From NCBI RefSeq assembly GCF_006345805.1, contig NC_043000.1:56420001-56484000 (forward strand): a DNA stretch of 64,000 bases, given 5' to 3'. Positions within the stretch are counted from its first letter, which is position 1, and every line of letters begins with the position of its first letter. This document shows, piece after piece, positions 480-52,732 of this stretch. The position numbers and the translations under genes are program-made. The notes under the pieces are model-generated. The model did no database searches. It worked only from the letters and a program-made list of their open reading frames with translations, and was not told the origin of the DNA. Origin of the DNA: Octopus sinensis. Lineage: Eukaryota.

Positions 480-560
480 TATATATTCATATACACACAC
501 ATACAAACATACATATATGTGTAGTATGCATGTATGTATATATATATATATTATATATAT

Positions 561-651
<91 letters not shown>

Positions 652-809
652 ATGTATACATACATACACATATATGTATAATATATACACACAAACTTAT
701 ACCTATATAATTTTTGAATAAAGGTGCATAAAGTATTTGATTGTATTCATATATAAAATGACATATGTATATATCTATATATGCATAACTGTACTGAGAT
801 ATATATGTA

Positions 810-860
<51 letters not shown>

Positions 861-1006
861 ATATATATATGTAATATATGTATATATATACACACACAAA
901 TATATCATATGTACATATATATCATCTATATACATATATTTATATATATGTATGTATGTATACATATATATATATACACACATATATATATATATATATA
1001 TGTATA

Positions 1007-1037
<31 letters not shown>

Positions 1038-1270
1038 TGCATATATATATATATATACACACACACATACATGCGCACATATACATACATATGAGTGAGT
1101 ATGTGTGTGTGTGTGTGTGTATGTATACATACATACACATATATGTATAATATATACACACAAACTTATACCTATATAATTTTTGAATAAAGGTGCATAA
1201 AGTATTTGATTGTATTCATATATAAAATGACATATGTATATATCTATATATGCATAACTGTACTGAGATA

Positions 1271-1351
<81 letters not shown>

Positions 1352-1805
1352 TATATATATATACACACACAAATATATCATATGTACATATATATCATCT
1401 ATATACATATATTTATATATATGTATGTATGTATACATATATATATATACACACATATATATATATATATATATATGTATATATTATATATACATATATA
1501 CACACACATATGCATATATATATATATACACACACACATACATGCGCACATATACATACATATGAGTGAGTGTGTGTGTGTGTGTGTGTGTGGAAACATG
1601 ACTGTTCCCTATTTACACACACAAGCATACACACATGAGTATATATATATATGTGTGTGTGTGTTTTGTTGGATTCTTTCATTTTTGACATTTTTATCTT
1701 TTTATCACATCAGAAAATATTGCTTCCAGTTTCAAAATCAGACATCTAACCAACATCTGAAAGCAAATAAATGTGATCTCCTACACACAGACATATATAT
1801 ATATA

Positions 1806-4244: not shown

Positions 4245-5927
4245 TCTTACAACAGCAGAAGCCCTAGCATTATTGGAAGAGCTGAGCAACAGAGGCGATG
4301 TTCACATGGGTCTTCCTCACAATATATATTTCTTTACTACCCACAAGGGGCTAAACATAGAGGGGACAAACAAATGGATTAAGTCGATTACATCGACCCC
4401 AGTGCGAAACTGGTACTTTATTTATCGACCCCGAAAGAATGAAAGGCAAAGTTGACCTTGGCGGAATTTTAACTCAGAATATAGAACTTTCCAATGGCGA
4501 TAGTGATGCTTCAGATGATGAGGCTCTAGTTTCCTCAGTTTGACTGAAAAGAGGGCTTTTGGAAACTGGTGCACAAATTTCTTGTCAACAGGATAAACCT
4601 AAAGACATTGAGGAAGTTGCAGGACATTTAAAACAAATTAAATTCAGTAAAACAAGAAACTGGAAGAAAAACAAAGCGGTGAATCATGTTTGAACTTCAT
4701 GTGAGCCTGTAGATACATCTGAGGAAGCAAAATCTTGCTCAAATCCAGTAGATTTCTTTAGTTTGCTCTTCACAGATGAATTACTGGATGACATTGTAGA
4801 ACAAACAAACTGAAATGCTGTTCAAAAAGGTAAAGTTCTGAGTGTATGCAAATCGTAGCTGTATGTATTCTTTGGTGGACTGCATTCAAACTCAGACTTC
4901 TACTTGACCACTTACAAAAAAAAAATTCAAGGAACATGGTGGCTTAAGAGAACATCTCTCTGTTGATGAAAGTATGATTCCATATTATGGCAAGTACCAT
5001 ACCAAACAATTTATAAAAGGGAAACTAATTTGGTTTGGTTTCAAAGTTCGGGTCCTTTGTTCTCAGCATGGATATATGCATGCTTTTGACTTCTATACTA
5101 GAAGAAAGACAGTCCTAACTAAACCGAAAATGCATTTGGCCTTGGTGGGAACATTGCCTTGATCTCATTGATGCTGTAGGAGTACCAGACAATAAAGGTT
5201 TCAAACTATTTTTTGATAACTATTTCACACGTATTCAATTGATGCCGAAACTTTTTGAGAAAGAAATATGTGCATCAGGAACCTGCAGAGAAAATAGGAC
5301 AGCTAGATATCCTTTCAAAACGAAAACTGAAATGAATGCATGCCCCAGAGGAACAGCTGAGTTCAAGTCTACTTCAAATATAGTCGCTGTGAAATGGAAA
5401 GATAATGATGTTGTTCTGCTATCAAACTTTGAAACCTATAAAATGTCCATTGTTAAATGCTATGATAGGCCTCAAAAGAAATATGTTCTAATTCCACAGC
5501 CTGAAAGCATCCAAAATTACAACAAATATATGGGATTTGTTGACCTTCTGGATCATAACATCGCTTCCTATAGGATTCAAATGCTGCAAAATAAACGGTG
5601 GTGGCCTATTTTATCATATTTTGTATCTGTAGCAATCCAAAACACATGCATCTTGATGAATAGAGCAAAGTACAAAATTACATTATACAATTTATCGAAA
5701 ACATTTCTCTAACTCTATTCAAAATGTATGGCACTCCAAAGTTTCAAAGAAAATGCACATCTGCTCATTTGAAAGACAATGCAGGATATGATGGTGTTGA
5801 GCATTGGATTGAATATATTCCAAATCAAAGGAGATGCAAAGAGTGCTCTGGGAAAAGTCATTTCATACGTGAAAAATGTTATGTAGGAGTTCTTCGCAAA
5901 TGGTTCAAGAAGTACCATGTTCAGTAA
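4245..5927 (+). pseudogene. piggyBac (DDE_Tnp_1_7/PGBD2-3-like) transposase pseudogene with stops, frameshifts and an internal deletion
   Basis: Motifs LTTAEALALLEE, NGDSDASDDE, PVDFFSLLFTDELLDDIVEQTN, VDESMIPYYGK..KQFIKGK..FGFK, FFDNYFT, GTCRENR, KWKDN, YNKYMGFVDLLD and a C-terminal RRCKEC cysteine-rich domain. Confidence 0.88.
4327..4480 (-). mobile_element. SINE family B, 5'-truncated, inserted into the piggyBac transposase N-terminus
   Basis: TATTTCTTTACTACCCACAAGGGGCTAAAC...GAAAGGCAAAGTTGACCTTGGCGGAATTTTAACTCAGAAT interrupts GLPH|ELSNGDSD. Confidence 0.85.
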
Positions 5928-17161: not shown

Positions 17162-18641
17162 GTAGTCTTATTTTTATAGTGTGCTTTCACTTCACTACCG
17201 AGCGCAGCTCTGTGTGCCTTGGGTATGTGCTGTGATTTGTTGTGATGCTCTGATGGTTACTGTATTGAAAGTGTTTTGCGTAGGATGTGTGCAGTGCCTA
17301 GTAGTGCAATTTTCTGGATGTTATGTGTAAGTCCTGGTGTTTTTGTTATGTATTTGTCTGAATATTTTTTATCATGCCTAATGCATGATACTGTGATAGG
17401 AATTGTTTCTGTTTTTAGATTCCACATTCTAGTTACCTCTATTTCCAGGTCTTTGTATTTTGAAAGTTTCTCCATTTCTTTTAGAGACACGTTGTCATCT
17501 GCTGGTATTGATACATAAATTAAAAAACATTTTTTTTCTTCATGATCTCTGACAACTATATCTGGTCTGTTGGCCTTAATTTCTCTATCTGTGTGTATTG
17601 GCATATCCCAGAGCATGGTTGCTTTCTCGTTTTCTGTGACCTTTTCTGGTGTGTGCCTATACCATCTTTTTTCTGTTGTTATTCCATAATGTTGGCATAG
17701 CTTCCAGTGTATGTAGGTCCCAACTCTGTCATGTCTGTGAATATATTCCTTCTTAGCCAGGACTGAGCAGCCAGAGATTATATGATTTATTGTTTCTTGT
17801 CCATCTCCACATATTCTGCAGTTGTTATATTTCTTTTCATAATATGTTTTTGGTAATTTCTGGTGGGGAGGCTTTGGTCTTGTGCTGCAATTAAAAATCC
17901 CTCTGTCTCCGCTTTGAGTCCTGAGCTACTCAACCATTGCTGGGATTTTTCTTCGTCTATTTCTTTTGCATTTAGTTTAGTCCAGTATTTGCCATGAAGA
18001 GGCTTTTCTTGCCATCGTTGTATCATGGTCCGTTGCTGTTCTAGTTTTAGTTTGGATTTCATTTGTTTTATAGCTTTTGTTTCTTCTTCTTCTTCTTCTT
18101 CTTCTTCTTCTTCTTCTTCTTCTTCTTCTTCTTCTTCATATTTGTTAGGTGGTATGATTTCTTGCTTGTATTTGTCAGCTTCCTTAAATATTGAGAACGG
18201 TTTTTTGTTTTGCTCGTGTTTTGCCGCTATTTGTATTAGTTTTCCTTCCTTCTGAAGTAGAAATTTTTGCACTCCTATGGTGGTTATTTTATAATAGTCT
18301 TCCAGCAGTATAAGGCCTCTACCACCTTCTATACGTTGTATATTTAGCCTTTCTGTCAGATTTTGGGTGATGCATCCTAGATCCTGTCATTATTTTTCTT
18401 GTTTTCCTATCTATTTTGGTTAGTTCATTTAGTGTCCAGTTAAGGATATAGTAGCTGTAACTTATAACTGGGACAGCTAAAGTGTTAATACCTATTATCT
18501 TGTTTTTAGCATTGAGCTCTGTTTTTAGTATTGATCTAACTCGTCTATAGTATTCTTTCTTTATTTTCTCTTTCATTTGTGTGTGTTGTGTCTTATCTAG
18601 TTCATGGATTCCTAAATATTTGTAAGTTTGGCTTTGGTCTA

Positions 18642-18644
<3 letters not shown>
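17161..18644 (-). mobile_element. 5'-truncated R4-clade (Dong-like) non-LTR retrotransposon inserted in a (TAA)n microsatellite
   Basis: RT end YKYLG...KEKIKKEYYRRVRSILKTELNAKNK...HHPKSD, a zinc-knuckle region, and an RLE domain LWD..IHTDREIKANRPDIVV..LIYVSIP..KEMEKLSKY with the catalytic D changed to Y. (TTA)n lies on both sides. Confidence 0.9.
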
Positions 18645-18685
<41 letters not shown>

Positions 18686-21408: not shown

Positions 21409-23793
21409 TTAAACAGCAGCCACAACAAAGTACTCAACTACATAGGTGACCAGAAAATCATGACTGTTACCACCAATGTTACCTCACAAGATCAAATTAC
21501 ATGTGGTAGGTTATGTATTTCTATGACTCTGAGAACTATGCCAGCAAAGCACAAGCTCTTGGTACGATGCTAGAGAGGTCAAAGGATAGGGTCCAGGCTA
21601 CATGTGGACCATCTCTTGCTAGAGCTAAAATTGGATTTCTGAGTGTCAACAATTCTATCTAGAAAAAAAAAACAAAGTTACAGAAGCACAGATGATAATT
21701 CCAACAAAACCTGGGAGTTAAGTAGGGACAGAAGGGTTTAATGCTAACACACCACTTTATGTTACCCCTACTGTATACCCTCATGAGCTAGAGAACTATG
21801 GAAGTGGCAGTATATCATCATTGCAGATAGGCATGATGTAACAATTGCAAAGTCAATGACCGTTTACAAAACATCTGATCTGTTGTCCATTTGTGGTCCA
21901 AAGAAGTCTCTGATCGAAATGAATGAAACATGTGCAAAACCCACAGACAAAAGCTTTCCTTTCAGTAGCCTGAAATGGCTTAGGACAACCAGTGACTGAC
22001 TCATCCTCAGGTTTTACATCATAATTTTCCATCTTCTTCTTACATAGATGTTCAGACAATGATTAGAGGTTTTGCAACATATTCATTTGCTATTTCAAGT
22101 ATTTTTGTGCCTCTTCACACTATTGCTAGTTGTTCACAGACCCTAAGCTGGGTTTATCTGTCCTTTTGCTAGACCTTGATTTTGTCTTGCCGGGCTTCTA
22201 GAAGCCCTTCTCACCAAGCTAGGCTGGTAAGGTGCCAGTTTATTTATCAATAACCCAACCTTGTAATAAGTAAAACTGGATTGTGTATCACCAGTAGCAT
22301 GCAAAGTGACCTGATATTGTACATACATAAACACAGATACATACACACACCAATATGCATACATACACATAACTAGACAAACATATGTATATGCACACAT
22401 GTGCATCAGTCAAAAACATACAGATTCATGCATGCAAATAACATATACACACACATGTGTGCACACAAACACATACATAGACAAAGACAAACAGACAGAC
22501 AGACTACACAATATTCAGTGGGAACAGCCACATGCTTGATGCAGGAGACTATTCAGTGAATTTACAATGAATATTATCTCCAACATTAATATCACAGTGT
22601 GTTAAATAACCAGCTTTTCTTCTGATTACATGCACTAAAGAAAGCTTTCATTCATTCAAAACCTGAATTTGCCATGCAGAAAATTACTACAAGTAATATG
22701 GCTGGACATAGCAGCATTAACATCAGAGATGAAATGAAGGAAAAACAACACTGAAAAAGGAAAATACTATCTTATCAGTTGTAGTTTGAGAAGAAATTAA
22801 AATTATTTGAAATTATAAATTACATTATACTTGGGGTAGTGAACTCAATAATGACTTATGTAATTGCTGTAAAATGGCAAAAAATATCCTTCTGTAGGAA
22901 TAAATGAAAATTTACTGCAACAAACTTTAACCAGATAGTTAGATTTATTTCATGAGAAAATAATTACAATAACAACCAACATCATTTTAATGTAATATAA
23001 GGGTCAGTGATTGTAATTTTTTTCTCAGCAGTGAAAACATTGCACAAAAAAACGGTAAACAAACATTCCTAAAACAGGCAAGCCAATATTATGTGTGACC
23101 AGAGCAGAATCCTACTGCTACAATTCAGTAAGGTCCACCATTATCATTTAGCTGCTTGTGATCATAGAAATAGCCAAAATTAGCAAATAAATTATGAACT
23201 GAAAGAGCACAGAATATGAAAGGGAAATGTATTTTTAATGAAATGTTTTCATGAAAGAGTATTTCAGTTTTAAAGTTCCCCTGCAACACAAACCCTAGTT
23301 GACTAATATTGATAGTAATTAATGATAGAGAGAAAGATTAATGATAAGGGGAGAGAACAATTTGCAACAGTGTAATGAACCATCATTCCGGCAAATAAAC
23401 ACCTGTTTATATTCCCTCTCCACAAATGCTAAACAGCATTATGAGCACACTGAAGAAGTAAACAAAGACAAAATAATGAAAGAAATGTCAACAAATTTGA
23501 TGATATCAAATGCAACAAAATAAATTGCTACACTTCTAACCAAAAAAGAACTAAAGAAGAAAATGGAGAAAATGAACAGAGATGATAACAAAAAGAAAAC
23601 CTGAATATAAATTGACTACTCTCAAACAGGAGCTAAAACATTTCAGTAAAAAAAATAAATTGTCACCAAGAAGAAAATAACTGAAAGAAGATTTAGTTGA
23701 AATGTGTGTTTGTGTAAATGTACACGAGAAGATGTATCTATATATGCATACACATATACACAAACATATATACATATATATATATATATACAC

Positions 23794-23826
<33 letters not shown>

Positions 23827-23985
23827 GATATAAATATAAAATAAATATAAGAGAGTGGTCACTATATTGCTCACTCTAGCACCAGTTAATCCAAAAGGTT
23901 TCAACCACGAAAATACATGTTTCCCATGAAAGCCAGTACGACTGTTAGCTCACACGGACAGGGCAAGTAAAAAATAACAAAAATA

Positions 23986-24081
23986 CAGATTATTTTGGGA
24001 CAATTGTTTCGCTATTAATGAATTAAATGTAATATTACTTACAAAAAAATCCATTTGTAGCTCGTCAGCCAAGACTATCTG
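23986..24081 (-). ncRNA. Type I hammerhead ribozyme (inverted copy)
   Basis: Reverse complement of the 24206-24300 motif, differing only by one extra U in the loop II U-run. Confidence 0.85.
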
Positions 24082-24205
24082 GATGAAATCCACTCAATCA
24101 CTCGCCAGATTTTACCATAACGATAAATACGCGTGGTTCAAATTGAACCACACGCGTATTTATCGTTATGGTAAAATCTGGCGATGTGATTGAGTGGATT
24201 TCATC

Positions 24206-24300
24206 CAGATAGTCTTGGCTGACGAGCTACAAATGGATTTTTTGTAAGTAATATTACATTTAATTCATTAATAGCGAAACAATTGTCCCAAAATAATCTG
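24206..24300 (+). ncRNA. Type I hammerhead ribozyme, predicted cleavage after GUC at 24287
   Basis: Stem I CAGAUAGUCUUGG/CCAAAAUAAUCUG (11 of 13 paired), core CUGACGA, stem II GCUA/UAGC with a 42-nt loop, GAAA, palindromic stem III ACAAUUGU, C17. Confidence 0.88.
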
Positions 24301-24720
24301 ATTTTTGTTATTTTTACTTGCCCTGTCCGTGTGAGCTAACAGTCGTACTGGCTTCATGGAAACATGTATTCGTGGTTGAAACCTTTGGATTAACTGGTGC
24401 TAGAGTGAGCAATATAGTGACCACTCTCTTATATTTATTTCGTAAAAATATTATAATAGTTATAAAATTATAATAATCCAGGTTTCTCGTAGCACTAGGC
24501 CACTTGGTGTTGAAAATATATATTAAATTAGTATCTAATTCTCTCACCTTATTAATTAATTATAATATGCTGCATTTATTTCTAAATGTGTATTTGTTTT
24601 CCGTGAAAGTTTGGCGCGCTGTTGGTTGGGGCATTTGATTATAACGTCGGATGTAATCAATTGAACCACCGCGTATTTATCGTTATGGTAAAATCTGGGT
24701 GTGATTGAGTGGATTTCATC

Positions 24721-24814
24721 CAGATAGTCTTGGCTGACGAGCTACAAATGGATTTTTTTGTAAGTAATATTACATTTAATTCATTAATAGCGAAACAATT
24801 GTCCCAATAATCTG
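24721..24814 (+). ncRNA. Type I hammerhead ribozyme (second tandem copy), predicted cleavage after 24803
   Basis: Same core and stems as 24206-24300. Two A's are missing in the 3' strand of stem I. Confidence 0.82.
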
Positions 24815-25098
24815 TATTTTGTTTTTTTTACTGCCCTGTCCGTGTGAGCTAACAGTCGTACTGGCTTTCATGGGAAACATGTATTTTCGTGTTGAAACTT
24901 TTGGATTAACTGGTGCTAGAGTGAGCAATATGTGACCACTCTCTTATATTTATTTTGTAAAAATATTATATATGTTATAAAATATTATAATATCCAGGTT
25001 TCTCGTAGCACTAGGCCACTTGGTGTGAATAAATATACTATTAAATTAGTATCTAATTCTCTCACCCTTATTAATTAATTATAGATATATATATATAT

Positions 25099-25159
<61 letters not shown>

Positions 25160-25173
25160 TATGTGTGTGTATG

Positions 25174-25263
<90 letters not shown>

Positions 25264-33726: not shown

Positions 33727-35584
33727 AACATACAAGAATAAATCTAGCTTCATTAGTCTCACTGTGTTGAGATGAACAACACCAATGAACGACACCAATG
33801 TTGAATACAAAGAGACAGTAACTGACATATTCCAACCAAGTCCACTTTCCCCGTCTCTGTTATAATCACCACTGGAATCAGATGCAGAAAAACAGAATGA
33901 ATTTCATACAATCCTTCACTGCATGTCAGTATAAGAATTGTGGTTCTCAGATAGGAAAAAGCAAGGTATATGCAGAGCATTAAATATGTGGATCATGCCA
34001 AGGTGTTCGACCAACTATTTGCATGCATACATGCCATGCCACAGGCCTTTTTAATCAGAGGTGACCTGGGTATTAGACAACAATAGCAACCAGAATGAAA
34101 GCAAATTATTAGCAGTTATTCTTTTCCTTCACCACCACCACCAGAACTGTCATCATCATCATCAATGAATTGTTATACTATGTACAACTGTGTAATCATG
34201 TACGGTAGTTCCAGTTGCCAGTATTCCAAACACAAAGAGGTTGATGTGAGGAAAGAAGGAAGAAATTGCAGTTGGTTCAGGGTCAAATGAAAGCAGAAAT
34301 ATTACTCTTAGAAGTTCTAGTAAGAAGAAATCCTCCCACAGCCTTACAAGCGACAGGTTAACCTATGGAAGACTACATATTTGTCAAGTAGTCCTTTTTT
34401 GTCTTTTTGTTTTTATATTGATCTTTCAGTAGGTGGAAACAATCAAATATGGTTAAGCTCAGCACAAAGACGTGCCACACATGACCTGTTATATTAGGAA
34501 AAGGATAGGGAAGAAAATTCTAAAAATAAGAGGCAAAGGGAGAGATCTATGTCCACAGACAACCAGTAACAGATCTATTATTAGAGATTTAGAATTCAAG
34601 GGCCAAAAGATAATATATAAATTAGCAGGCAGACATACACACAACATGGATAGCTGGGTGGATGAACAGCCAGAGAGAAAGACAGACAGAGAGGTAAAGA
34701 GATGATTTATTTGTTAAGATATACTACAAAACTATAAAAGCTTACAGTAAGAGGTTCTTGATTAAGAAAGCAACATCATATATATTTTAGTAATTTATTT
34801 ATCTTCAAAATGGTATATTAAAGATAATGCTCAATGGTTGTATACAGACACAGGGTTGTTGAAGTTAGCCAGACAATCACAAAAGAAAGCTAATGTTTTT
34901 AAATTTAGCTGTCTTCCAGAACATTTCTCTTTTAGAAGAAATAAAGAATGGACAGCGAAAAACTAGATGATGTTTATTCTATGAAATATATTATCTTTTA
35001 TCTGTTTTATTTATTAGATTGTGGCCTTGCTGAAGTACAGTCTTGAAAGATTTAATCAAACAAATTTACCCTTGCTACTTTATTCTATTGCTCTTTACTG
35101 CTGAACCACTAAGTTACAGGGATGTAAGCAAGTCAACAGCAGTTGTCCAGTAGTTGGTGGGGCAAACACAAACTCAGACACACATACATATATAGATATA
35201 CATACATATATAGATTACACAATAAGCTTCCACAGTTTCATCTACCAAATTCAATCACAAAGCATCGGTCAGCTTGAGGCTGTACTAGAAGACACTTTGT
35301 TCAGGTGCCACACAATGGGACTGAACCCAAAACCACATGGTTGCAAAACGTGCTTCATAACCACACAGTCATGTCTACACCTATGACATGATAAAAAATT
35401 GTTAACAAATATAGGCGCAGGAGTGGCTGTGTTGTAAGTAGCTTGCTTACCAACCACATGGTTCCGAGTTCAGTCCCACTACATGGCACCTTGGGCAAGT
35501 GTCTTCTACTATAGCCTCAGGTTGATCAAAGCCTTGTGAGTGGATTTGGTAGACGGAAACTGAAAGAAGCCCGTTGTATACATG

Positions 35585-35626
<42 letters not shown>

Positions 35627-35832
35627 GTGAAATAGAAAGATGAATAATCTTGTAGTAGATTAATCAAAAGTTTAACCGATACCTTAGTAGCAAAAATCAC
35701 AGCAGTAAACAGCACGGTTGGAGGTACAACCATATGGTGTTGCAACCGTGCGTTGGTGCGGATAATTGAAATTAAAACATTATTGGTGAATTGAAGAAAT
35801 GGAGCTGAACGCAGATTGAACAGAAATCGTTT

Positions 35833-35926
35833 TATTTCATTCTACACGTGTTTCGAAAGGCACAAATTACCAAAATCCGATTGAATAATGGGACCATATT
35901 GTGTCTTTCTCTTCAGGAAGAAAATA
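35833..35926 (-). ncRNA. Type I hammerhead ribozyme
   Basis: Exact reverse complement of 36020-36113. Confidence 0.85.
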
Positions 35927-36019
35927 GGAAATCCGTTGGAAACACAAAAACAGAACAGAGGCGGAGCAATTTGTTTTTGCTCCGCCTCTGTTCTGTTTTT
36001 GTTTTTCCAACGGATTTCC

Positions 36020-36113
36020 TATTTTCTTCCTGAAGAGAAAGACACAATATGGTCCCATTATTCAATCGGATTTTGGTAATTTGTGCCTTTCGAAACACGT
36101 GTAGAATGAAATA
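36020..36113 (+). ncRNA. Type I hammerhead ribozyme, predicted cleavage after GUA at 36103
   Basis: Stem I UAUUUUCUUC/GAAUGAAAUA, core CUGAAGA, stem II GAAAGACACAA/UUGUGCCUUUC, GAAA, palindromic stem III ACACGUGU, A17. Confidence 0.87.
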
Positions 36114-36169
36114 AAACGATTTCTGTTCAATCTGCGTTCAGCTCCATTTCTTCAATTCACCAATAATGT

Positions 36170-36234
<65 letters not shown>

Positions 36235-37160
36235 ATGTTTGTATGTCTGTGTTTGTCCCCTAGCATTGCTTGACAACCAATGTTGGTGTGTTTATGTCCC
36301 CGTCACTTAGCGGTTAGGCAAAAGAGACTGATAGAATAAGTACTGGGCTTACAAAGAATAAGTCCCGGTGTCGAGTTGCTTGACTAAAGGCGGTGCTCCA
36401 GCATGGCCGCAGTCAACTGACTGAAACAAGTAAAAGAGTAAAAGAGTAAGAGTAAATAAATGATACTCCAGTATCTGTATAAGATGTGGTGTATTATAAA
36501 ACATGCCACCAAGTTGTAGCAATGGGAGACAACTCTGTTTCATAGAAGCTGTGTATCTTTATTGAGCATTACAATTCTTTTAAACACATACAAACAATTT
36601 GAGCAAATATGTTTACAAATGAATATCTCAGAAGGCCTACAAATAGCTATAAGCTAGTTTAAAAGTCCCTAATCATATTGATTTGCAGTCTGGCACCTTA
36701 ACCTGACAACTACTGAATGACAAGGATGTCCCATTGAAGATTAAAATGAGATTTATAGCCGGTTATTCTCAGGGGAGGAAATTACAGAAGTTTTGGAAAC
36801 TAATTGGCAAAGGAATATAAGAGTTACGGAAGATGATCAATGTGATACAGGGTCGAAATGAAATTAATATCAACAGCATAAACAATTTGGTTTGGTGCCA
36901 GAACATGACACAACAAACGTTGCTTTTCTGATATGAAAACTGCAGAGAAAATGTCTGATGTAAAATTCTGATGCAAGAAGAATTAGTCAAACAACTTTTG
37001 CTGAGTTTGTCTGCAGATACAACAGTTCAATCAATATGCACATATACATACACAAGGCAATGCACACAAGCAAACAGACAGACACACACATACACACACA
37101 CATATATATACATACACACACATACATTATATATATATATATATACATACACACACATAC

Positions 37161-39371: not shown

Positions 39372-39408
<37 letters not shown>

Positions 39409-39570
39409 GTAAAATATGAAAAATCAATGAAAATGCACATTGCAAATAAAAAAAGGCTTTTTATGACAGGTAACGATAAATATATACATTTAGATGGACT
39501 GAGGTAGTAATAAGAGTCATAAAAGTCATTATTATGAGATGATTATAAGATGATAATAAAGTAAGAGAAC

Positions 39571-39611
39571 AAAGCGAACCATGGTTTCGGCAAAAAGCTA
39601 TTCATCGCTTT
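39571..39611 (-). ncRNA. Variant hammerhead-like motif in the Penelope 3' region
   Basis: RNA AAAGCG AUGAAUA GC UUUUU GCC GAAA CCAUGG UU CGCUUU has a 6-bp stem I and palindromic stem III ACCAUGGU. The core is non-canonical (A3/U8). Confidence 0.55.
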
Positions 39612-39781
39612 GAAAACACCGGCTAATACACGGTGTCAGGTCTAATAGTTCCTGAGAAAAAAGATTATTTGTAAGGGAGGTAAGTAGTTCTGGATTATTT
39701 GTAAGGGAGTTAAGTAGTTCTGGATTTAGAGATGTGAGTGGTGTAAGAAGTGTATAGGGGTTAGTGGTTTCAATTGAAGAG

Positions 39782-40075
39782 TTAGTGGTGTTCTGTATTG
39801 AGTTGTGTGTTCATATTTAGTTGGGGGAGATATTTATTGATGAAAAATGCCTCTTTATTCAACCTTTGTTGAATTGTGGTGTTCTGTGAACATTGATAAA
39901 AGGGAAAGATTTGGAAATTGGGAGTAAGATTCCTGGCACACCTTTCTATGTGTTCACTCACCTTTAACTGTCTGTATTGAGGGTGGCGGATTTGCTCTTT
40001 GTGAATGGTGGTTCTTTGACAGAGAGAAATTCCTGTTTGTCCAATATAGCGTTTACCACATCCTATGCATGTCAT
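39782..40075 (-). pseudogene. Penelope-like GIY-YIG endonuclease C-terminal fragment
   Basis: CIGCGKRYIGQTGISLCQRTTIH...VSEHIERC...FQIFP...RLNKEAFFINKYLPQLN fits the PLE GIY-YIG pattern C..C...YIGQT..L..R..H..H..E..FI...P.LN. Confidence 0.88.
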
Positions 40076-40726
40076 GACAAATTTGATTTGATCTTAAATT
40101 TATTTGCAATGTGCATTTTTGTTGATTTTTCATATTTTACCCTTCCATTTCCACGTGTATTTTATATTTTCTTTTTGTAACATATTTCTACTATATATAT
40201 ATATATATATAGTTCTGAAGGAGATTCAGCATGGCACCCAGAATGTAGCAATGCTGGCCCTTTGAATTACAGGTACAACTTACTTTTGCCAGCTGAGTGG
40301 ACTGTAACAATGTGAAATAAAGTGTCATGCTTAAGGACACAATGTGCTACCAGGAATTGAACTCATGACATTATGATCATGAGCTGAATAGACCTAACCA
40401 CTAAGCCACACACCTTTACAATAGTAAATAGGAGAGTGATGGAGGGATAAGCATTAAGATGATAAGGAGTGGAGTTAAAGGCTACATGTGGGAGGAGAGT
40501 GAGAGACAAGTATATGCAAGGGTGATGATGGTTGATATTATGTATGAGGAATGCATGTCAACACTGGATCATGGTGGCAGACCAGAAGCTTGGGTGAGGA
40601 GACAAGAAGAAGAAGCATCAGTTGTAGATTTGGCAGGGGCACAGTTGTGCACATACACATTATGCGTTGAGAGCATACTGTATCGTATCACCAATCATTA
40701 TGGTCCTTTGTCACTCCTTTCATGAG

Positions 40727-43599: not shown

Positions 43600-44260
<661 letters not shown>

Positions 44261-50900: not shown

Positions 50901-52732
50901 GTGGAAGAGGTAGACCCAGGAAAACCTGGGACGAGGTGGTGAAGCACGACCTTCGAACTTTAGGTCTCACTAAGGAAATGTCTAGAGACCGAGACCTATG
51001 GAAGTATGCTGTGCATGAGAAGACCCGGCAAGACTAGTCAGGCCATAACCCGTGGCCCCGACCTGGGACGTAGTCAGTCCTGTGCATACCTTCCTTCTTG
51101 TGACACTTATGAAGACCTGTTGAGGCAAGTGAAAATCAAATCAAATCAAAACAAATCAAAATAGATGAACATCAGTGGAATTGTATTCTTTGTGGTACCA
51201 GTGCCGGTGGCACACAAGAAAACCACCCAAACGTGGCCGTAACCAGTACCGCATCGACTGGCCTCCGTGCTGTGGGCACAACAAACACCATCCGATCGTG
51301 GCCGTTCGCCAGCCTCATCTGGCACCTGTGCCGGTGGCACATAAAGACACCATCCGAAGACCCGGCGACGTAGTCAGTCCACCTGTGCATACCTTCCCTC
51401 TTATGACACTTGTGAAGACCTGTTGAGGCAAGTGTGTGACACTTGTGAAGACCTGTTGAGGCAGAGGCAAGTGTGTGACACTTGTGGAGACCTGTTGAGG
51501 CAAGTGTGTGACCCTTGTGAAGACCTGTTGAGGCAAGTGAAAATCAAACCAAATCAAAATAGATGAATATCAATGGAATTTGTATCTTTGTGGTTCCAGT
51601 ACCGGTGGCACACAAGAAAACCATCCGAACGTGGCCGTAGCTGGTACCGCATCGACTGGCCTCCGTGCTGTGGGCACAACAAACACCATCTGATCGTGGC
51701 CGTTCGCCAGCCTCACCTGGCACCTGTGTCGGTGGCACATAAAGACACCATCCGAAGACCCGGCGACGTAGTCAGTCCACCTGTGCATACCTTCCCTCTT
51801 ATGACACTTGTGAAGACCTGTTGAGGCAGAGGCAAGTGTGTGACACTTTGTGAAGACCTGTTGAGGCAGAGGCAAGTGTGTGACACTTGTGGAGACCTGT
51901 TGAGGCAAGTGTGTGACACGCGTGACACTTGTGAAGACCTGTTGAGGCAAGTGAAAATCAAAACAAAATCAAAATCAAACCAAATCAAAATAGATGAACA
52001 TCAATGGAATTTGTATCTTTGTGGTTCCAGTACCGGTGGCACACAAGAAAACCATCCGATCGTGGCCGTTCGCCAGCCACATCTGGCACCTGTGTCGGTG
52101 GCACATAAAGACACCATCCGAAGACCCGGCGACGTAGACAGTCCACCTGTGCATACCTTCCTTCTTGTGACACTTGTGAAGACCTGTTGAGGCAAGTGAA
52201 AATCAAATCAAATCAAAACAAATCAAAATAGATGAACATAAATGGAATTTGTATCTTTGTGGTACCAGTGCCGGTGGCACACAAGAAAATCATCCGAACG
52301 TGGCCGTAGCCAGTACCGCATAGACTGGCCTCCGTGCTTTGGGGACGTAACAAACACCATCCGATCGTGGCCGTCTGCCAGCCTCGTCTGGCACCTGCCA
52401 GCCTCATCTGGCACCTGTGTCGGTGGCACATAAAAACACCATCCGAGCGTGGCCGTCTGCCAGCCTCGTCTGGCACCTGTGTCGGTGGCACATAAAAACA
52501 CCATCCGAGCGTGGCCGTTCGCCAGCCTCGTCTGGCACCTGTGTCGGTGGCACATAAAATCACCCACTACACTCTCGGAGTGGTTGGCGTTAGGAAGGGC
52601 ATCCAGCTGTAGAAACACTGCCAGATCTGACTGGCCTGGTGCAGCCTTCGGGCTCCCCAGACCCCAGTTGAACCGTCCAACCCATGCTAGCATGGAAAAC
52701 GGACGCTAAATGATGATGATGATGATGATGAT
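50901..52732 (+). mobile_element. RTE-clade LINE 3' end whose 3' UTR is amplified into nested tandem repeats
   Basis: ORF end GRGRPRKTWDEVVKHDLRTLGLTKEMSRDRDLWKYAVHEKTRQD*, four ~240-430-bp units and a (GAT)n tail. Confidence 0.88.

What the first reader, a model, noticed from the sequence alone, without database searches (positions are those of the whole stretch)
23838..25083. Retrozyme-like element: three hammerhead ribozymes in an inverted-plus-tandem array defining a 516-nt monomer
Seen in sequence: a non-coding, CpG-retaining unit arranged as inverted X (23838-24141), then X-Y-Z-X-Y (518-bp period), with both ends in (AT)n. X contains a canonical type I HHR (stem I 11/13 bp, CUGACGA, GCUA/UAGC stem II with a 42-nt loop, GAAA, palindromic ACAAUUGU stem III, GUC site). 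The two plus-strand sites (24287 and 24803) would release a 516-nt RNA. Established: tandem HHR-bearing non-coding units that give circular RNAs (non-LTR retrozymes) are described in some metazoans, HHRs with palindromic stem III associated with Penelope-like elements can cleave as dimers, and PLEs make partial tandems with 5' inversions. Inference: a cephalopod retrozyme/circRNA family mobilised by a PLE. The copies differ mostly by homopolymer indels, so part of the structure could be long-read error.
Basis: partly seen in the sequence, partly recalled or inferred. Interest (0 to 1): 0.92.

Follow-up and report, generated by a model that had tools for sequence, protein, structure and literature searches.

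The report
Octopus hammerhead-ribozyme retroelement insertion
A young, non-coding mobile element carrying three self-cleaving hammerhead ribozyme motifs sits in a (TA)n microsatellite of an octopus-like genome, with the insertion signature of Penelope-like retrotransposons; it is a new example of a known kind, and its RNA circle is still unproven.

Summary
Window 23838-25083 is an inverted 0.6 copy followed by 1.8 tandem copies of a 516-519-bp non-coding unit. It lies between two halves of an (AT)n/(ACAT)n microsatellite and is flanked by a 9-bp direct repeat, ATAGATATA.

Each copy has a complete type I hammerhead core, with cleavage sites after 24287 and 24803 on the + strand and 23999 on the - strand. 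Helix III is 2 bp inside an 8-nt palindrome, so a double hammerhead is favoured.

Rfam models do not detect the motif. My descriptor finds it far above chance. It also finds a second, sequence-unrelated element (35625-36173) with the same ribozyme architecture and a head-to-head inversion in (TA)n. A Penelope-like endonuclease fragment with the same insertion signature lies at 39385-40208. The host is an octopod.

Best reading: a non-autonomous, Penelope-dependent hammerhead element, called a non-LTR retrozyme in current usage. Cleavage, the 516-nt circle, copy number and the autonomous partner could not be tested.

The copies differ almost only by indels, so the local consensus is poor and raw reads should be checked. 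New member of a known kind; moderate-low interest.

The parts
23754..23832 (.). Left half of the target (AT)n/(ACAT)n microsatellite. Its last 9 bp (23824-23832, ATAGATATA) form the left copy of a candidate target-site duplication.
   Evidence: TRF. ATAGATATA occurs once in each flank and 7 times in the 64 kb.
23838..24141 (-). Inverted 0.6 copy (unit positions 1 to ~300), joined head-to-head to unit 1. Its outer end lies in an AT-rich stretch of the unit.
   Evidence: BLAST 96.4% identity. Alignment A1. 0 substitutions and 10 indel events against unit 1.
23985..24082 (-). Hammerhead motif of the inverted copy. C3 is at 24068 and C17 at 23999, with cleavage 3' of 23999 on the minus strand.
   Evidence: Descriptor hit; sequence check.
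24134..24149 (.). Inversion centre GGTTCAAATTGAACC. It coincides with the natural 8-nt palindrome TCAATTGA of the unit, which is seen intact at the tandem junction 24659-24666.
   Evidence: Sequence.
24142..24660 (+). Complete unit 1 (519 bp), non-coding, 33% GC, CpG observed/expected 1.14.
24205..24301 (+). Hammerhead 1. Stem I 5' strand 24205-24218; CUGACGA 24219-24225; helix II arm 24226-24275 (GCUA/UAGC plus an 8-bp and a 5-bp extension); GAAA 24276-24279; palindrome ACAAUUGU 24279-24286; C17 24287; stem I 3' strand 24288-24301.
   Evidence: MFE z=-5.37 for the motif and -5.55 for the helix II arm.
24288..24803 (+). Predicted 516-nt RNA monomer released by cleavage at both + strand ribozymes.
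   Evidence: Cleavage positions. The + strand fold is -134.6 kcal/mol (z=-4.87); the - strand fold is -94.6 kcal/mol (z=-2.60).
24661..25080 (+). Partial unit 2 (unit positions 1 to ~427), ending in the AT-rich stretch TTAATTAATT(ATA).
   Evidence: BLAST 92.9% identity. 5 substitutions and 20 indel events against unit 1.
24720..24817 (+). Hammerhead 2. The core, helix II and helix III are identical to hammerhead 1. C3 is at 24734 and C17 at 24803. The stem I 3' strand carries a 2-nt deletion (8/13 ungapped).
25081..25253 (.). Right half of the target microsatellite. Its first 9 bp (25081-25089, ATAGATATA) form the right copy of the candidate target-site duplication.

Best explanation
This is one recent insertion of a short, non-coding retroelement with a unit of about 516 nt. 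Its RNA carries a type I hammerhead ribozyme, and it is copied into DNA by the enzyme of a Penelope-like element (PLE). In current usage that makes it a metazoan non-LTR retrozyme, meaning a non-autonomous PLE derivative. The host is an octopod genome.

Shown here:
- The architecture: an inverted 0.6 copy joined head-to-head to 1.8 tandem copies.
- The (TA)n target and a 9-bp flanking duplication.
- A complete hammerhead core in all three copies.
- A long, stable helix II arm.
- A 2-bp helix III embedded in an 8-nt palindrome.
- Strand-asymmetric RNA stability favouring the ribozyme strand.
- Unusually high CpG content and near-zero substitutions between copies, which together indicate youth.

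Inferred:
1. A multimeric + strand transcript folds so that two neighbouring ribozymes pair through ACAAUUGU into a double hammerhead. Each half then cuts the other's GUC|C site and releases a 516-nt RNA. That RNA may be circularised by a host tRNA ligase.
2. A PLE RT/GIY-YIG dimer cuts both strands of a (TA)n tract. Both 3' ends prime cDNA synthesis at internal AU-rich sites of the RNA, at unit positions ~427 and ~300.
3. One cDNA runs 1.8 unit lengths on a multimeric or circular template.
4. The two cDNAs are joined head-to-head at the palindrome TCAATTGA, which gives the inverted-plus-tandem structure in a single event.
For: Architecture and flanks. TSD-like ATAGATATA at both borders.

Hammerhead core and helices in three copies. 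Chance is 0.05 per 64 kb (loose) and 0/400 (strict). The minimal descriptor with an 8-nt palindrome gives 0.003 per 64 kb expected against 5 hits in two unrelated sequence families.

Helix II arm z=-5.55 and whole motif z=-5.37.

The double-hammerhead fold is about 9 kcal/mol better than two constrained monomers, and within 4 kcal/mol of the unconstrained dimer optimum.

Monomer RNA z=-4.87 on the ribozyme strand against -2.60 on the other strand.

No coding capacity. GC 33% and CpG observed/expected 0.99 against 0.43. 0-1 substitutions per ~305 nt between the X copies.

Same window, independent cases:
- Element 35625-36173 has a hammerhead of the same architecture and a 197-nt head-to-head inversion in (TA)n.
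- 39385-40208 is a (TA)n-flanked fragment with a GIY-YIG-like ORF, a 44-nt inverted end and a ~45-nt extra tail. The GIY-YIG call rests on my own knowledge of the motif.

Literature:
- PLE insertions are partial tandems with an adjacent inverted 5'-truncated copy, carry the hammerhead in the pLTR, and prefer (TA)n (PMC8557442).
- A purified PLE protein cuts and extends both DNA strands at AT-rich sites and starts reverse transcription internally (PMC11167929).
- Metazoan type I hammerheads with short palindromic helix III act as dimers (PMC4209133, PMC7229834).
- Animal non-LTR retrozymes are related to PLE pLTRs, with consensus lengths of 51-972 bp (bioRxiv 10.64898/2026.07.22.740005).

Octopod host.
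Against: - Rfam hammerhead covariance models give no hit at gathering score or at E<=10.
- The three ribozyme copies are identical, so there is no covariation within the family.
- No second copy of the unit was found in the window or in any collection I could search. Copy number and an autonomous partner are therefore unknown.
- There is no similarity to the PLE-like fragment in the window.
- The 516-nt monomer exceeds the 170-400 nt RNA size range of PMC7229834.
- In vitro, PLE insertion did not need hammerhead cleavage and used uncleaved RNA (PMC11167929), so the circle is not required by the data.
- The copies differ by 39 indel events against 6 substitutions, while the arms of the neighbouring element differ by 2 substitutions and no indel. 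The local consensus is therefore poor.
Confidence: 0.7

Rival explanations
1. The same non-autonomous PLE derivative, but it moves only as a linear, uncleaved multimeric transcript. The hammerhead is a passenger or a protein-assisted processing signal, and no 516-nt circular RNA accumulates.
For: In vitro, hammerhead mutants did not change PLE insertion, uncleaved RNA was the main substrate, and no RNA-seq reads ended at the cleavage site (PMC11167929). PLE min-hammerheads cleave poorly in vitro (PMC4209133). The tandem here is only 1.8 units, which a dimeric linear template explains as well as a circle does.
Against: The ribozyme is a complete canonical core with a stable stem I and helix II. 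The monomer RNA is markedly more structured on the ribozyme strand. Retrozymes with comparable hammerheads do give circles in coral, mussel and axolotl (PMC7229834).
Confidence: 0.3
2. Part of the structure, either the inverted arm or the second tandem copy, is an assembly artefact. It would come from noisy or chimeric long reads used to bridge an (AT)n-rich gap.
For: The copies differ almost only by single-base indels, about 3% with 39 events against 6 substitutions. That is the spectrum of an unpolished long-read consensus. The nearby inverted element has clean arms, so the problem is local. The spacer at the inversion centre is close to zero.
Against: - The left flank beyond 23838 is not the mirror image of the right side, as it would be for a missed-adapter palindromic read.
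- The whole complex is bracketed by one interrupted microsatellite and a 9-bp direct repeat.
- The inversion point is a natural palindrome of the unit.
- Two other elements in the window show the same head-to-head design with clean sequence.
Confidence: 0.12
3. A local tandem or inverted duplication, or a satellite-like repeat, that happens to contain a hammerhead-like string. It is neither a ribozyme nor a retroelement.
For: There is no Rfam hit, no covariation within the three copies, and no other copy in the window.
Against: The strict descriptor gave 0 hits in 400 shuffles. The palindrome-bearing descriptor gives 0.003 per 64 kb, yet two unrelated sequences satisfy it. All invariant core positions are present, along with the G10.1-C11.1 and A15.1-U16.1 pairs. 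The TSD-like flanks and the (TA)n target fit an insertion.
Confidence: 0.05
4. A foldback or MITE-type DNA transposon with long inverted repeats inserted at a TA target.
For: There are long inverted repeats: 23973-24101 pairs with 24701-24829 at 92%. The flanks are TA-rich.
Against: The two termini are not inverted repeats of each other: the left end is unit position ~300 and the right end is ~427. The inverted arm abuts its partner with no internal region. The direct tandem part has no counterpart in foldback elements. No transposase is present.
Confidence: 0.03

Closest known systems
Metazoan non-LTR retrozymes (Cervera & de la Pena 2020, PMC7229834; Li, Clavereau & Pollet 2026, bioRxiv 10.64898/2026.07.22.740005)
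   Same: Non-coding, low-GC tandem repeats in which each unit carries a type I hammerhead on one strand. The target-site duplication is longer than 4 bp. Helix III is short and palindromic, which implies action as a dimer. A dependence on Penelope-like elements has been proposed.
   Different: Only 1.8 tandem units plus an inverted arm are present here. The 516-nt monomer is above the 170-400 nt RNAs of the 2020 paper, although it lies inside the 51-972 bp range of the 2026 preprint. Helix II is a ~50-nt, 17-bp arm rather than 4 bp plus a loop. The host is a cephalopod, and the searches run in the held paper library turned up no paper linking retrozymes to cephalopods. RNA circles and copy number are untested.
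Hammerheads in the pseudo-LTRs of Penelope-like elements (Cervera & de la Pena 2014, PMC4209133; Craig et al. 2021, PMC8557442; Frangieh et al. 2024, PMC11167929)
   Same: Type I motif with a palindrome at helix III and a larger-than-usual helix II. Insertions are partial tandems with an adjacent inverted 5'-truncated copy. Targets are AT-rich or (TA)n. Both target strands are cut and extended. The two ends are unequal (the 'tail').
   Different: There is no RT/GIY-YIG ORF. The repeat period is 516 bp rather than about 3 kb or more. The end-length difference is 127 nt, not 30-40 nt. Unlike the min-HHRs, helix III is present (2 bp plus a tetraloop) and stem I is long (11/13).
Hammerhead-bearing satellite/SINE-like repeats: newt satellite 2 and Schistosoma Sm-alpha (own knowledge; both families are discussed in PMC7229834 and PMC4209133)
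   Same: Short non-coding repeats with a type I hammerhead whose weak helix III makes dimeric cleavage the efficient mode.
   Different: Those repeats form long arrays or very high copy numbers of ~330-bp units. Here a single short insertion is seen, and no tRNA-like part was detected.
Plant LTR retrozymes (PMC4918200)
   Same: Non-autonomous retroelements whose hammerheads delimit an RNA that circularises.
   Different: The plant elements have type III hammerheads inside true LTRs, a PBS and PPT, 4-bp duplications, GC above 55%, and are mobilised by Ty3/Gypsy elements. None of these features is present here.

Membership tests
Hammerhead ribozyme, type I | Invariant core C3 U4 G5 A6 N7 G8 A9 ... 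G12 A13 A14 ... H17 (not G) | tested here: met
   CUGACGA, GAAA and GUC are present in all three copies.
Hammerhead ribozyme, type I | Three helices around the core, with the G10.1-C11.1 and A15.1-U16.1 closing pairs and helix I open | tested here: met
   Stem I is 11/13 (8/13 in copy 2). Helix II is GCUA/UAGC extended to 17 bp. Helix III is AC/GU plus the AAUU loop.
Hammerhead ribozyme, type I | Scores at or above the Rfam gathering threshold of a hammerhead covariance model | tested here: not met
   No hammerhead family is reported at gathering score over the window, nor at E<=10 over 23700-25200 or 35550-36250. The ~42-nt insertion in helix II and the 2-bp helix III are the likely cause; that is an inference.
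Hammerhead ribozyme, type I | Helices supported by compensatory changes among relatives | tested here: inconclusive
   The three copies are identical across the motif. A second, sequence-unrelated element at 36018-36115 keeps the core and the design with different helices: GAAAG/CUUUC, the palindrome ACACGUGU, and a 9/10 stem I (Smith-Waterman not above shuffles). That is two families only.
Hammerhead ribozyme, type I | Site-specific self-cleavage giving 2',3'-cyclic phosphate and 5'-OH ends | not testable with these tools
   This needs in vitro transcription of monomer and dimer templates.
Metazoan non-LTR retrozyme | Head-to-tail repeats, each with a same-strand type I hammerhead | tested here: met
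   Two + strand motifs lie 516 nt apart in 1.8 tandem units. This is the minimal dimeric case.
Metazoan non-LTR retrozyme | Non-coding, low GC (<45-50%), no LTR/PBS/PPT | tested here: met
   The longest ORF is 77 aa without a homologue. GC is 33%. No tRNA-like part was detected.
Metazoan non-LTR retrozyme | Monomer size within the described range | tested here: inconclusive
   516 nt is above the 170-400 nt of PMC7229834 but inside the 51-972 bp of bioRxiv 10.64898/2026.07.22.740005.
Metazoan non-LTR retrozyme | Dispersed multi-copy family with independent insertion sites | tested here: inconclusive
   There is no other copy in the 64-kb window. Nothing was found in the metagenome, viral or prokaryotic collections; 3 chance 20-mer matches were rejected. 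No cephalopod genome collection was available.
Metazoan non-LTR retrozyme | Monomer-length linear and circular RNAs in tissues | not testable with these tools
   This needs northern blots, RNase R treatment, divergent RT-PCR, or RNA-seq of the host.
Penelope-like element (insertion signature and dependence) | AT-rich/(TA)n target, partial tandem, adjacent inverted 5'-truncated copy | tested here: met
   features as defined in PMC8557442 and PMC11167929.
Penelope-like element (insertion signature and dependence) | 30-40-bp 'tail' present at one end only | tested here: inconclusive
   The two arms end at different unit positions, ~300 and ~427, a 127-nt difference. The neighbouring elements show 148 nt and ~45 nt.
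Penelope-like element (insertion signature and dependence) | ORF with telomerase-like RT and GIY-YIG endonuclease | tested here: not met
   There is no such ORF in 23838-25083, so the element is not itself a PLE. At most it is a non-autonomous derivative.
Penelope-like element (insertion signature and dependence) | Sequence similarity of the unit to the pLTR of an autonomous PLE of the same genome | tested here: not met
   There is no similarity to the only PLE-like fragment in the window, 39385-40208.

The most novel reading that the evidence does not exclude
Octopus genomes may harbour active families of Penelope-dependent retrozymes with an unusual hammerhead. The ribozyme has a ~50-nt, 17-bp helix II arm and an 8-nt palindromic helix III, which obliges it to act as a double hammerhead, and current Rfam models miss it. 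These families would produce abundant circular RNAs of about 516 nt.

Their head-to-head insertions would also create perfect 200-300-bp hairpin transcripts. Such hairpins would be ready-made substrates for ADAR editing or small-RNA pathways in an animal known for extensive RNA editing. The editing link is my speculation.
Probability: 0.3. Interest if true: 0.5.

Novelty: new member of a known kind. Interest (0 to 1): 0.33.

Why it matters
If confirmed, this would extend hammerhead retrozymes and their link to Penelope-like elements to cephalopods.

It would also provide a very young insertion in which all the junctions are still readable: an intact-looking target duplication, both priming sites, and the head-to-head joint at a palindrome. 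That makes it a useful natural record of the both-strand cleavage and internal-initiation mechanism so far shown only in vitro (PMC11167929).

The finding also flags a blind spot. Hammerheads with long helix II arms escape the Rfam models, so genome annotations probably undercount them.

None of this overturns current views. Specialists already expect type I hammerheads, retrozymes and PLEs across invertebrates.

Tried and rejected
- **Rfam.** The gathering run on the whole window and E<=10 runs on both elements gave no hammerhead. The only hits were sub-threshold miRNA-like matches caused by the long hairpins, which I rejected as spurious.
- **Relatives by DNA pattern.** Two 20-22-mers from the ribozyme were scanned against metagenome, viral and prokaryotic collections. 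The only result was three metagenome hits to one 20-mer. They lack the rest of the motif and lie in unrelated sequence, so they are chance matches.
- **Relatives through pseudo-ORFs.** I tried exact look-ups of the 77-aa and 47-aa ORFs and a homology search with the 77-aa ORF. All came back empty.
- **More octopus DNA through piggyBac homologues.** Searches returned only a 1-kb Logan contig.
- **Confirming the GIY-YIG fragment at 39785-40093.** The homology search, Pfam at E<=10 and PDB sequences all gave no hit. The assignment rests on motif recognition from my own knowledge.
- **Structural alignment of the two hammerhead families.** The MAFFT alignment is out of structural register, so I built no covariance model and ran no pair-count statistics.
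- **Element 1 against element 2, and against the PLE-like fragment.** No similarity above shuffles.
- **tRNA-derived SINE idea.** ARAGORN finds no tRNA in the window.
- **MITE/foldback idea.** Rejected because the termini are not inverted repeats of each other.
- **Missed-adapter palindromic read idea.** Rejected because the left flank is not the mirror image of the right side.
Full report
**1. What is in the sequence**

Window 23838-25083 is a composite of one repeated unit. BLAST of 24142-24660 against the window finds three things:
- the unit itself (519 bp);
- a second, partial head-to-tail copy at 24660-25088 (92.9% identity);
- an inverted copy of unit positions 2-299 at 24141-23839 (96.4%).

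The repeat finder and the three-way alignment A1 give the same picture.

The centre of the inversion (GGTTCAAATTGAACC, 24134-24149) falls on an 8-nt palindrome. The unit carries this palindrome anyway: TCAATTGA is seen intact at the tandem junction 24659-24666.

Both sides of the composite are the same kind of microsatellite, (AT)n interspersed with ACAT. The 9-mer ATAGATATA occurs exactly once in each flank, directly at the two borders (23824-23832 and 25081-25089). It occurs only 7 times in the 64 kb. This looks like a target-site duplication around one insertion event.

The element has no ORF longer than 77 aa, and that ORF has no homologue. GC is 33%. CpG observed/expected is 0.99, against 0.43 for the rest of the window. 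No tRNA-like part was detected.

**2. The ribozyme motif**

Each copy carries the following string:
- 5'-CCAGAUAGUCUUGG (stem I)
- CUGACGA
- GCUA, then a 42-43-nt insert, then UAGC (helix II)
- GAAA
- C-AAUU-G (helix III, with A15.1 and U16.1)
- UC|CCAAAAUAAUCUGA

All invariant hammerhead positions are present, as are the G10.1-C11.1 and A15.1-U16.1 pairs.

C17 lies at 24287 and 24803 on the + strand and at 23999 on the - strand.

Stem I is 11/13 in two copies and 8/13 ungapped in the third, which has a 2-nt deletion.

The '42-nt loop' is not a loop. It folds into 8-bp and 5-bp extensions of helix II, giving a 17-bp imperfect arm (z=-5.55 against dinucleotide shuffles; whole motif z=-5.37).

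Helix III is only 2 bp within a monomer, but A15.1-U16.1 and its surroundings form the palindrome ACAAUUGU. With the core kept unpaired, a dimer joined by this 8-bp helix is about 9 kcal/mol better than two constrained monomers. It lies within 4 kcal/mol of the unconstrained dimer optimum. Its topology is the classical double hammerhead, in which each half cuts the other's site.

**3. Is it more than chance?**

A loose descriptor gives 0.05 hits per 64 kb on both strands in Markov shuffles. The strict version (stem I at least 11/13, helix II at least 4 bp) gave 0 hits in 400 shuffles.

Rfam does not help. There is no hammerhead family at gathering score or at E<=10. The long insertion in helix II and the minimal helix III are the likely reasons, but the formal test is negative and I report it as such.

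Relaxing my descriptor produced two further hits. The relaxed version needs no stem I, a helix II of at least 4 bp, and an 8-nt palindrome starting at A15.1. The new hits, at 36030(+) and 35916(-), lie in a different element. That descriptor is expected 0.003 times per 64 kb.

The second motif reads: CUGAAGA, GAAAG, a 45-nt insert, CUUUC, GAAA, the palindrome ACACGUGU, then A|GAAUGAAAUA, with a 9/10 stem I. Its sequence is unrelated to the first (Smith-Waterman not above shuffles). The design is the same: a long helix II arm and an 8-nt palindromic helix III.

Two independent sequences meeting such a rare descriptor is the best available substitute for covariation. The second motif is thermodynamically weak as a monomer (z=-0.43) and gains about 14 kcal/mol as a dimer.

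**4. Context in the same window**

Element 2 (35625-36173) lies between (AT)n and (TA)n(TG)n. It consists of two 197-nt arms joined head-to-head with a 7-nt spacer. The arms are 99% complementary, with 2 substitutions and no indels. The minus-strand copy continues 148 nt further.

Element 3 (39385-40208, minus strand) is also flanked by (AT)n. It contains an ORF with a GIY-YIG-like string (CIGCGKRYIGQT...R..H...VSEH...E.FFI), which I recognise from knowledge of PLE endonucleases. Its 3'-terminal 44 nt are repeated in inverted orientation near the other end, followed by about 45 nt of extra sequence. Pfam, PDB and the homology search gave nothing for that ORF, so the assignment is a lead and not a result.

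All three elements share three features: a (TA)n target, a head-to-head inverted copy, and arms that end at different internal positions.

The host is an octopod. A piggyBac ORF at 5119-5709 is 85% identical to an Octopus bimaculoides UniRef protein.

**5. Mechanism**

The literature supplies the frame:
- PLE insertions are partial tandems (pseudo-LTRs), often with an adjacent inverted 5'-truncated copy and a one-sided 'tail'. They carry hammerheads in the pLTR and prefer (TA)n (PMC8557442).
- A purified PLE protein cuts and extends both target strands at AT-rich sites and starts reverse transcription at internal sites of the RNA (PMC11167929).
- Metazoan type I hammerheads with short palindromic helix III work as dimers (PMC4209133, PMC7229834).
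- Tandem hammerhead repeats give monomer-length linear and circular RNAs in coral, mussel and axolotl (PMC7229834).
- In vertebrates these retrozymes are phylogenetically tied to PLE pLTRs (bioRxiv 10.64898/2026.07.22.740005).

Applied here, a PLE enzyme cut both strands of a (TA)n tract. Each 3' end primed cDNA at an AU-rich internal site of the element's RNA, at unit positions ~427 and ~300. One cDNA ran 1.8 units on a multimeric or circular template. The two cDNAs were then joined at the palindrome TCAATTGA.

All of this is inference from anatomy. What is shown is the anatomy and the youth of the insertion: 0-1 substitutions per ~305 nt between X copies, and intact CpG content.

The ribozyme strand is also the better-folding RNA strand, at -134.6 kcal/mol (z=-4.87) against -94.6 kcal/mol (z=-2.60). 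This fits a functional + strand RNA.

Whether a 516-nt circle is made is open. In vitro PLE insertion did not need cleavage (PMC11167929).

**6. Caveat on the assembly**

The copies of element 1 differ by 39 indel events and 6 substitutions in total, and many of the indels lie outside homopolymers. This is an error spectrum, not a mutation spectrum. Element 2 has clean arms, so the consensus is locally poor around 23.8-25.1 kb.

I consider a wholesale artefact unlikely, for four reasons:
- the left flank is not a mirror image of the right side;
- the composite is bracketed by one interrupted microsatellite and a 9-bp repeat;
- the inversion point is a natural palindrome;
- two clean neighbours have the same design.

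Only raw reads can settle it.

**7. Comparison and verdict**

The element works like, and most likely is, a metazoan non-LTR retrozyme, meaning a non-autonomous PLE derivative.

Membership features met:
- same-strand type I hammerheads in tandem;
- non-coding;
- low GC;
- a long target duplication;
- the PLE-type insertion signature.

Not met or untestable:
- Rfam score;
- covariation within the family;
- copy number;
- RNA circles;
- similarity to a PLE pLTR.

It differs from described cases in four ways: the long helix II arm, the 516-nt monomer, the host group, and the minimal 1.8-unit array with an inverted arm. The library searches I ran surfaced no paper linking retrozymes to cephalopods.

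This is a new member of a known kind. It is of moderate-low interest in itself. It is useful as a young, fully legible insertion, and as a sign that hammerheads of this design are under-annotated.

Noticed in passing
window 35625-36173: A second hammerhead-bearing element lies between (AT)n (35586-35624) and (TA)n(TG)n (36170-36235). Its 197-nt arms (35773-35969 and 35977-36173) are joined head-to-head with a 7-nt spacer, and the minus-strand copy extends a further 148 nt. The hammerheads have C3 at 36030(+) and 35916(-): CUGAAGA, GAAAG, a 45-nt insert, CUUUC, GAAA, the palindrome ACACGUGU, then A. The sequence is unrelated to the reported element.
   Followed up: yes
window 39385-40208 (minus strand): An ~820-bp insertion flanked by (AT)n. 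ORF 39785-40093 has a GIY-YIG-like motif typical of Penelope-like endonucleases; this is my recognition, and Pfam, PDB and homology searches were all empty. The 44-nt terminal sequence is repeated in inverted orientation with ~45 nt of extra 'tail'. The 3' UTR has CGAAACCAUGGUUC (palindrome ACCAUGGU) between CAAAGCG and CGCUUUG. That looks like the 3' half of a hammerhead with a non-canonical 5' core (AUGAAUA, possibly A3/U8 in place of C3/G8). Unresolved.
   Followed up: partly
window 23838-25083 versus 35773-36173: Consensus quality differs sharply between two similar repeat structures. Copies of element 1 differ by 39 indel events and 6 substitutions. The arms of element 2 differ by 2 substitutions and no indel. 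This suggests a locally unpolished long-read patch around 23.8-25.1 kb.
   Followed up: partly
window 24232 and 36049: In both hammerhead families an AUG with G at +4 sits a few nucleotides into the 5' strand of helix II (AAAUGG and AUAUGG). In the Anolis PLE the ORF starts at stem II (PMC11167929). Here the reading frames are short (about 21-34 codons), so this may be a relic of a PLE start codon or a coincidence.
   Followed up: no
window 24659-24666 and 24279-24286: The unit contains CAATTG twice: in the palindrome at the inversion/tandem junction (TCAATTGA) and in helix III of the ribozyme (ACAATTGT). The two could pair in RNA. Significance unknown.
   Followed up: no
window 43600-44259: A very long (GAC)n trinucleotide array of about 220 copies with 97% matches. 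It gives the highest CpG observed/expected in the window (~2.8).
   Followed up: no
window 4908-5924: A piggyBac transposase remnant (Pfam DDE_Tnp_1_7, E=4e-21), broken over several frames. It is 85% identical to an Octopus bimaculoides UniRef protein, which identifies the host as an octopod.
   Followed up: partly
window 17260-18684 (minus strand): A LINE-type remnant broken over three frames. The only domain evidence is a sub-threshold zf-RVT match (E=0.0023, 19 bits against a 27.5 cut-off), and one ORF contains a poly-Glu run.
   Followed up: no
window 51100-52700 (minus strand): Several consecutive ORF-like stretches with near-identical peptides (…FMCHRHRCQ.RLANGHDRMVF…) spaced about 400 bp apart. 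This suggests a tandem array of a ~400-bp repeat. Related peptides occur at 47.7-48.0 kb and 60.9-61.5 kb.
   Followed up: no
window 533-1591: A complex microsatellite with a 469-bp higher-order period (2.3 copies, 92% matches) built from (TA)n, (CA)n and (TG)n.
   Followed up: no
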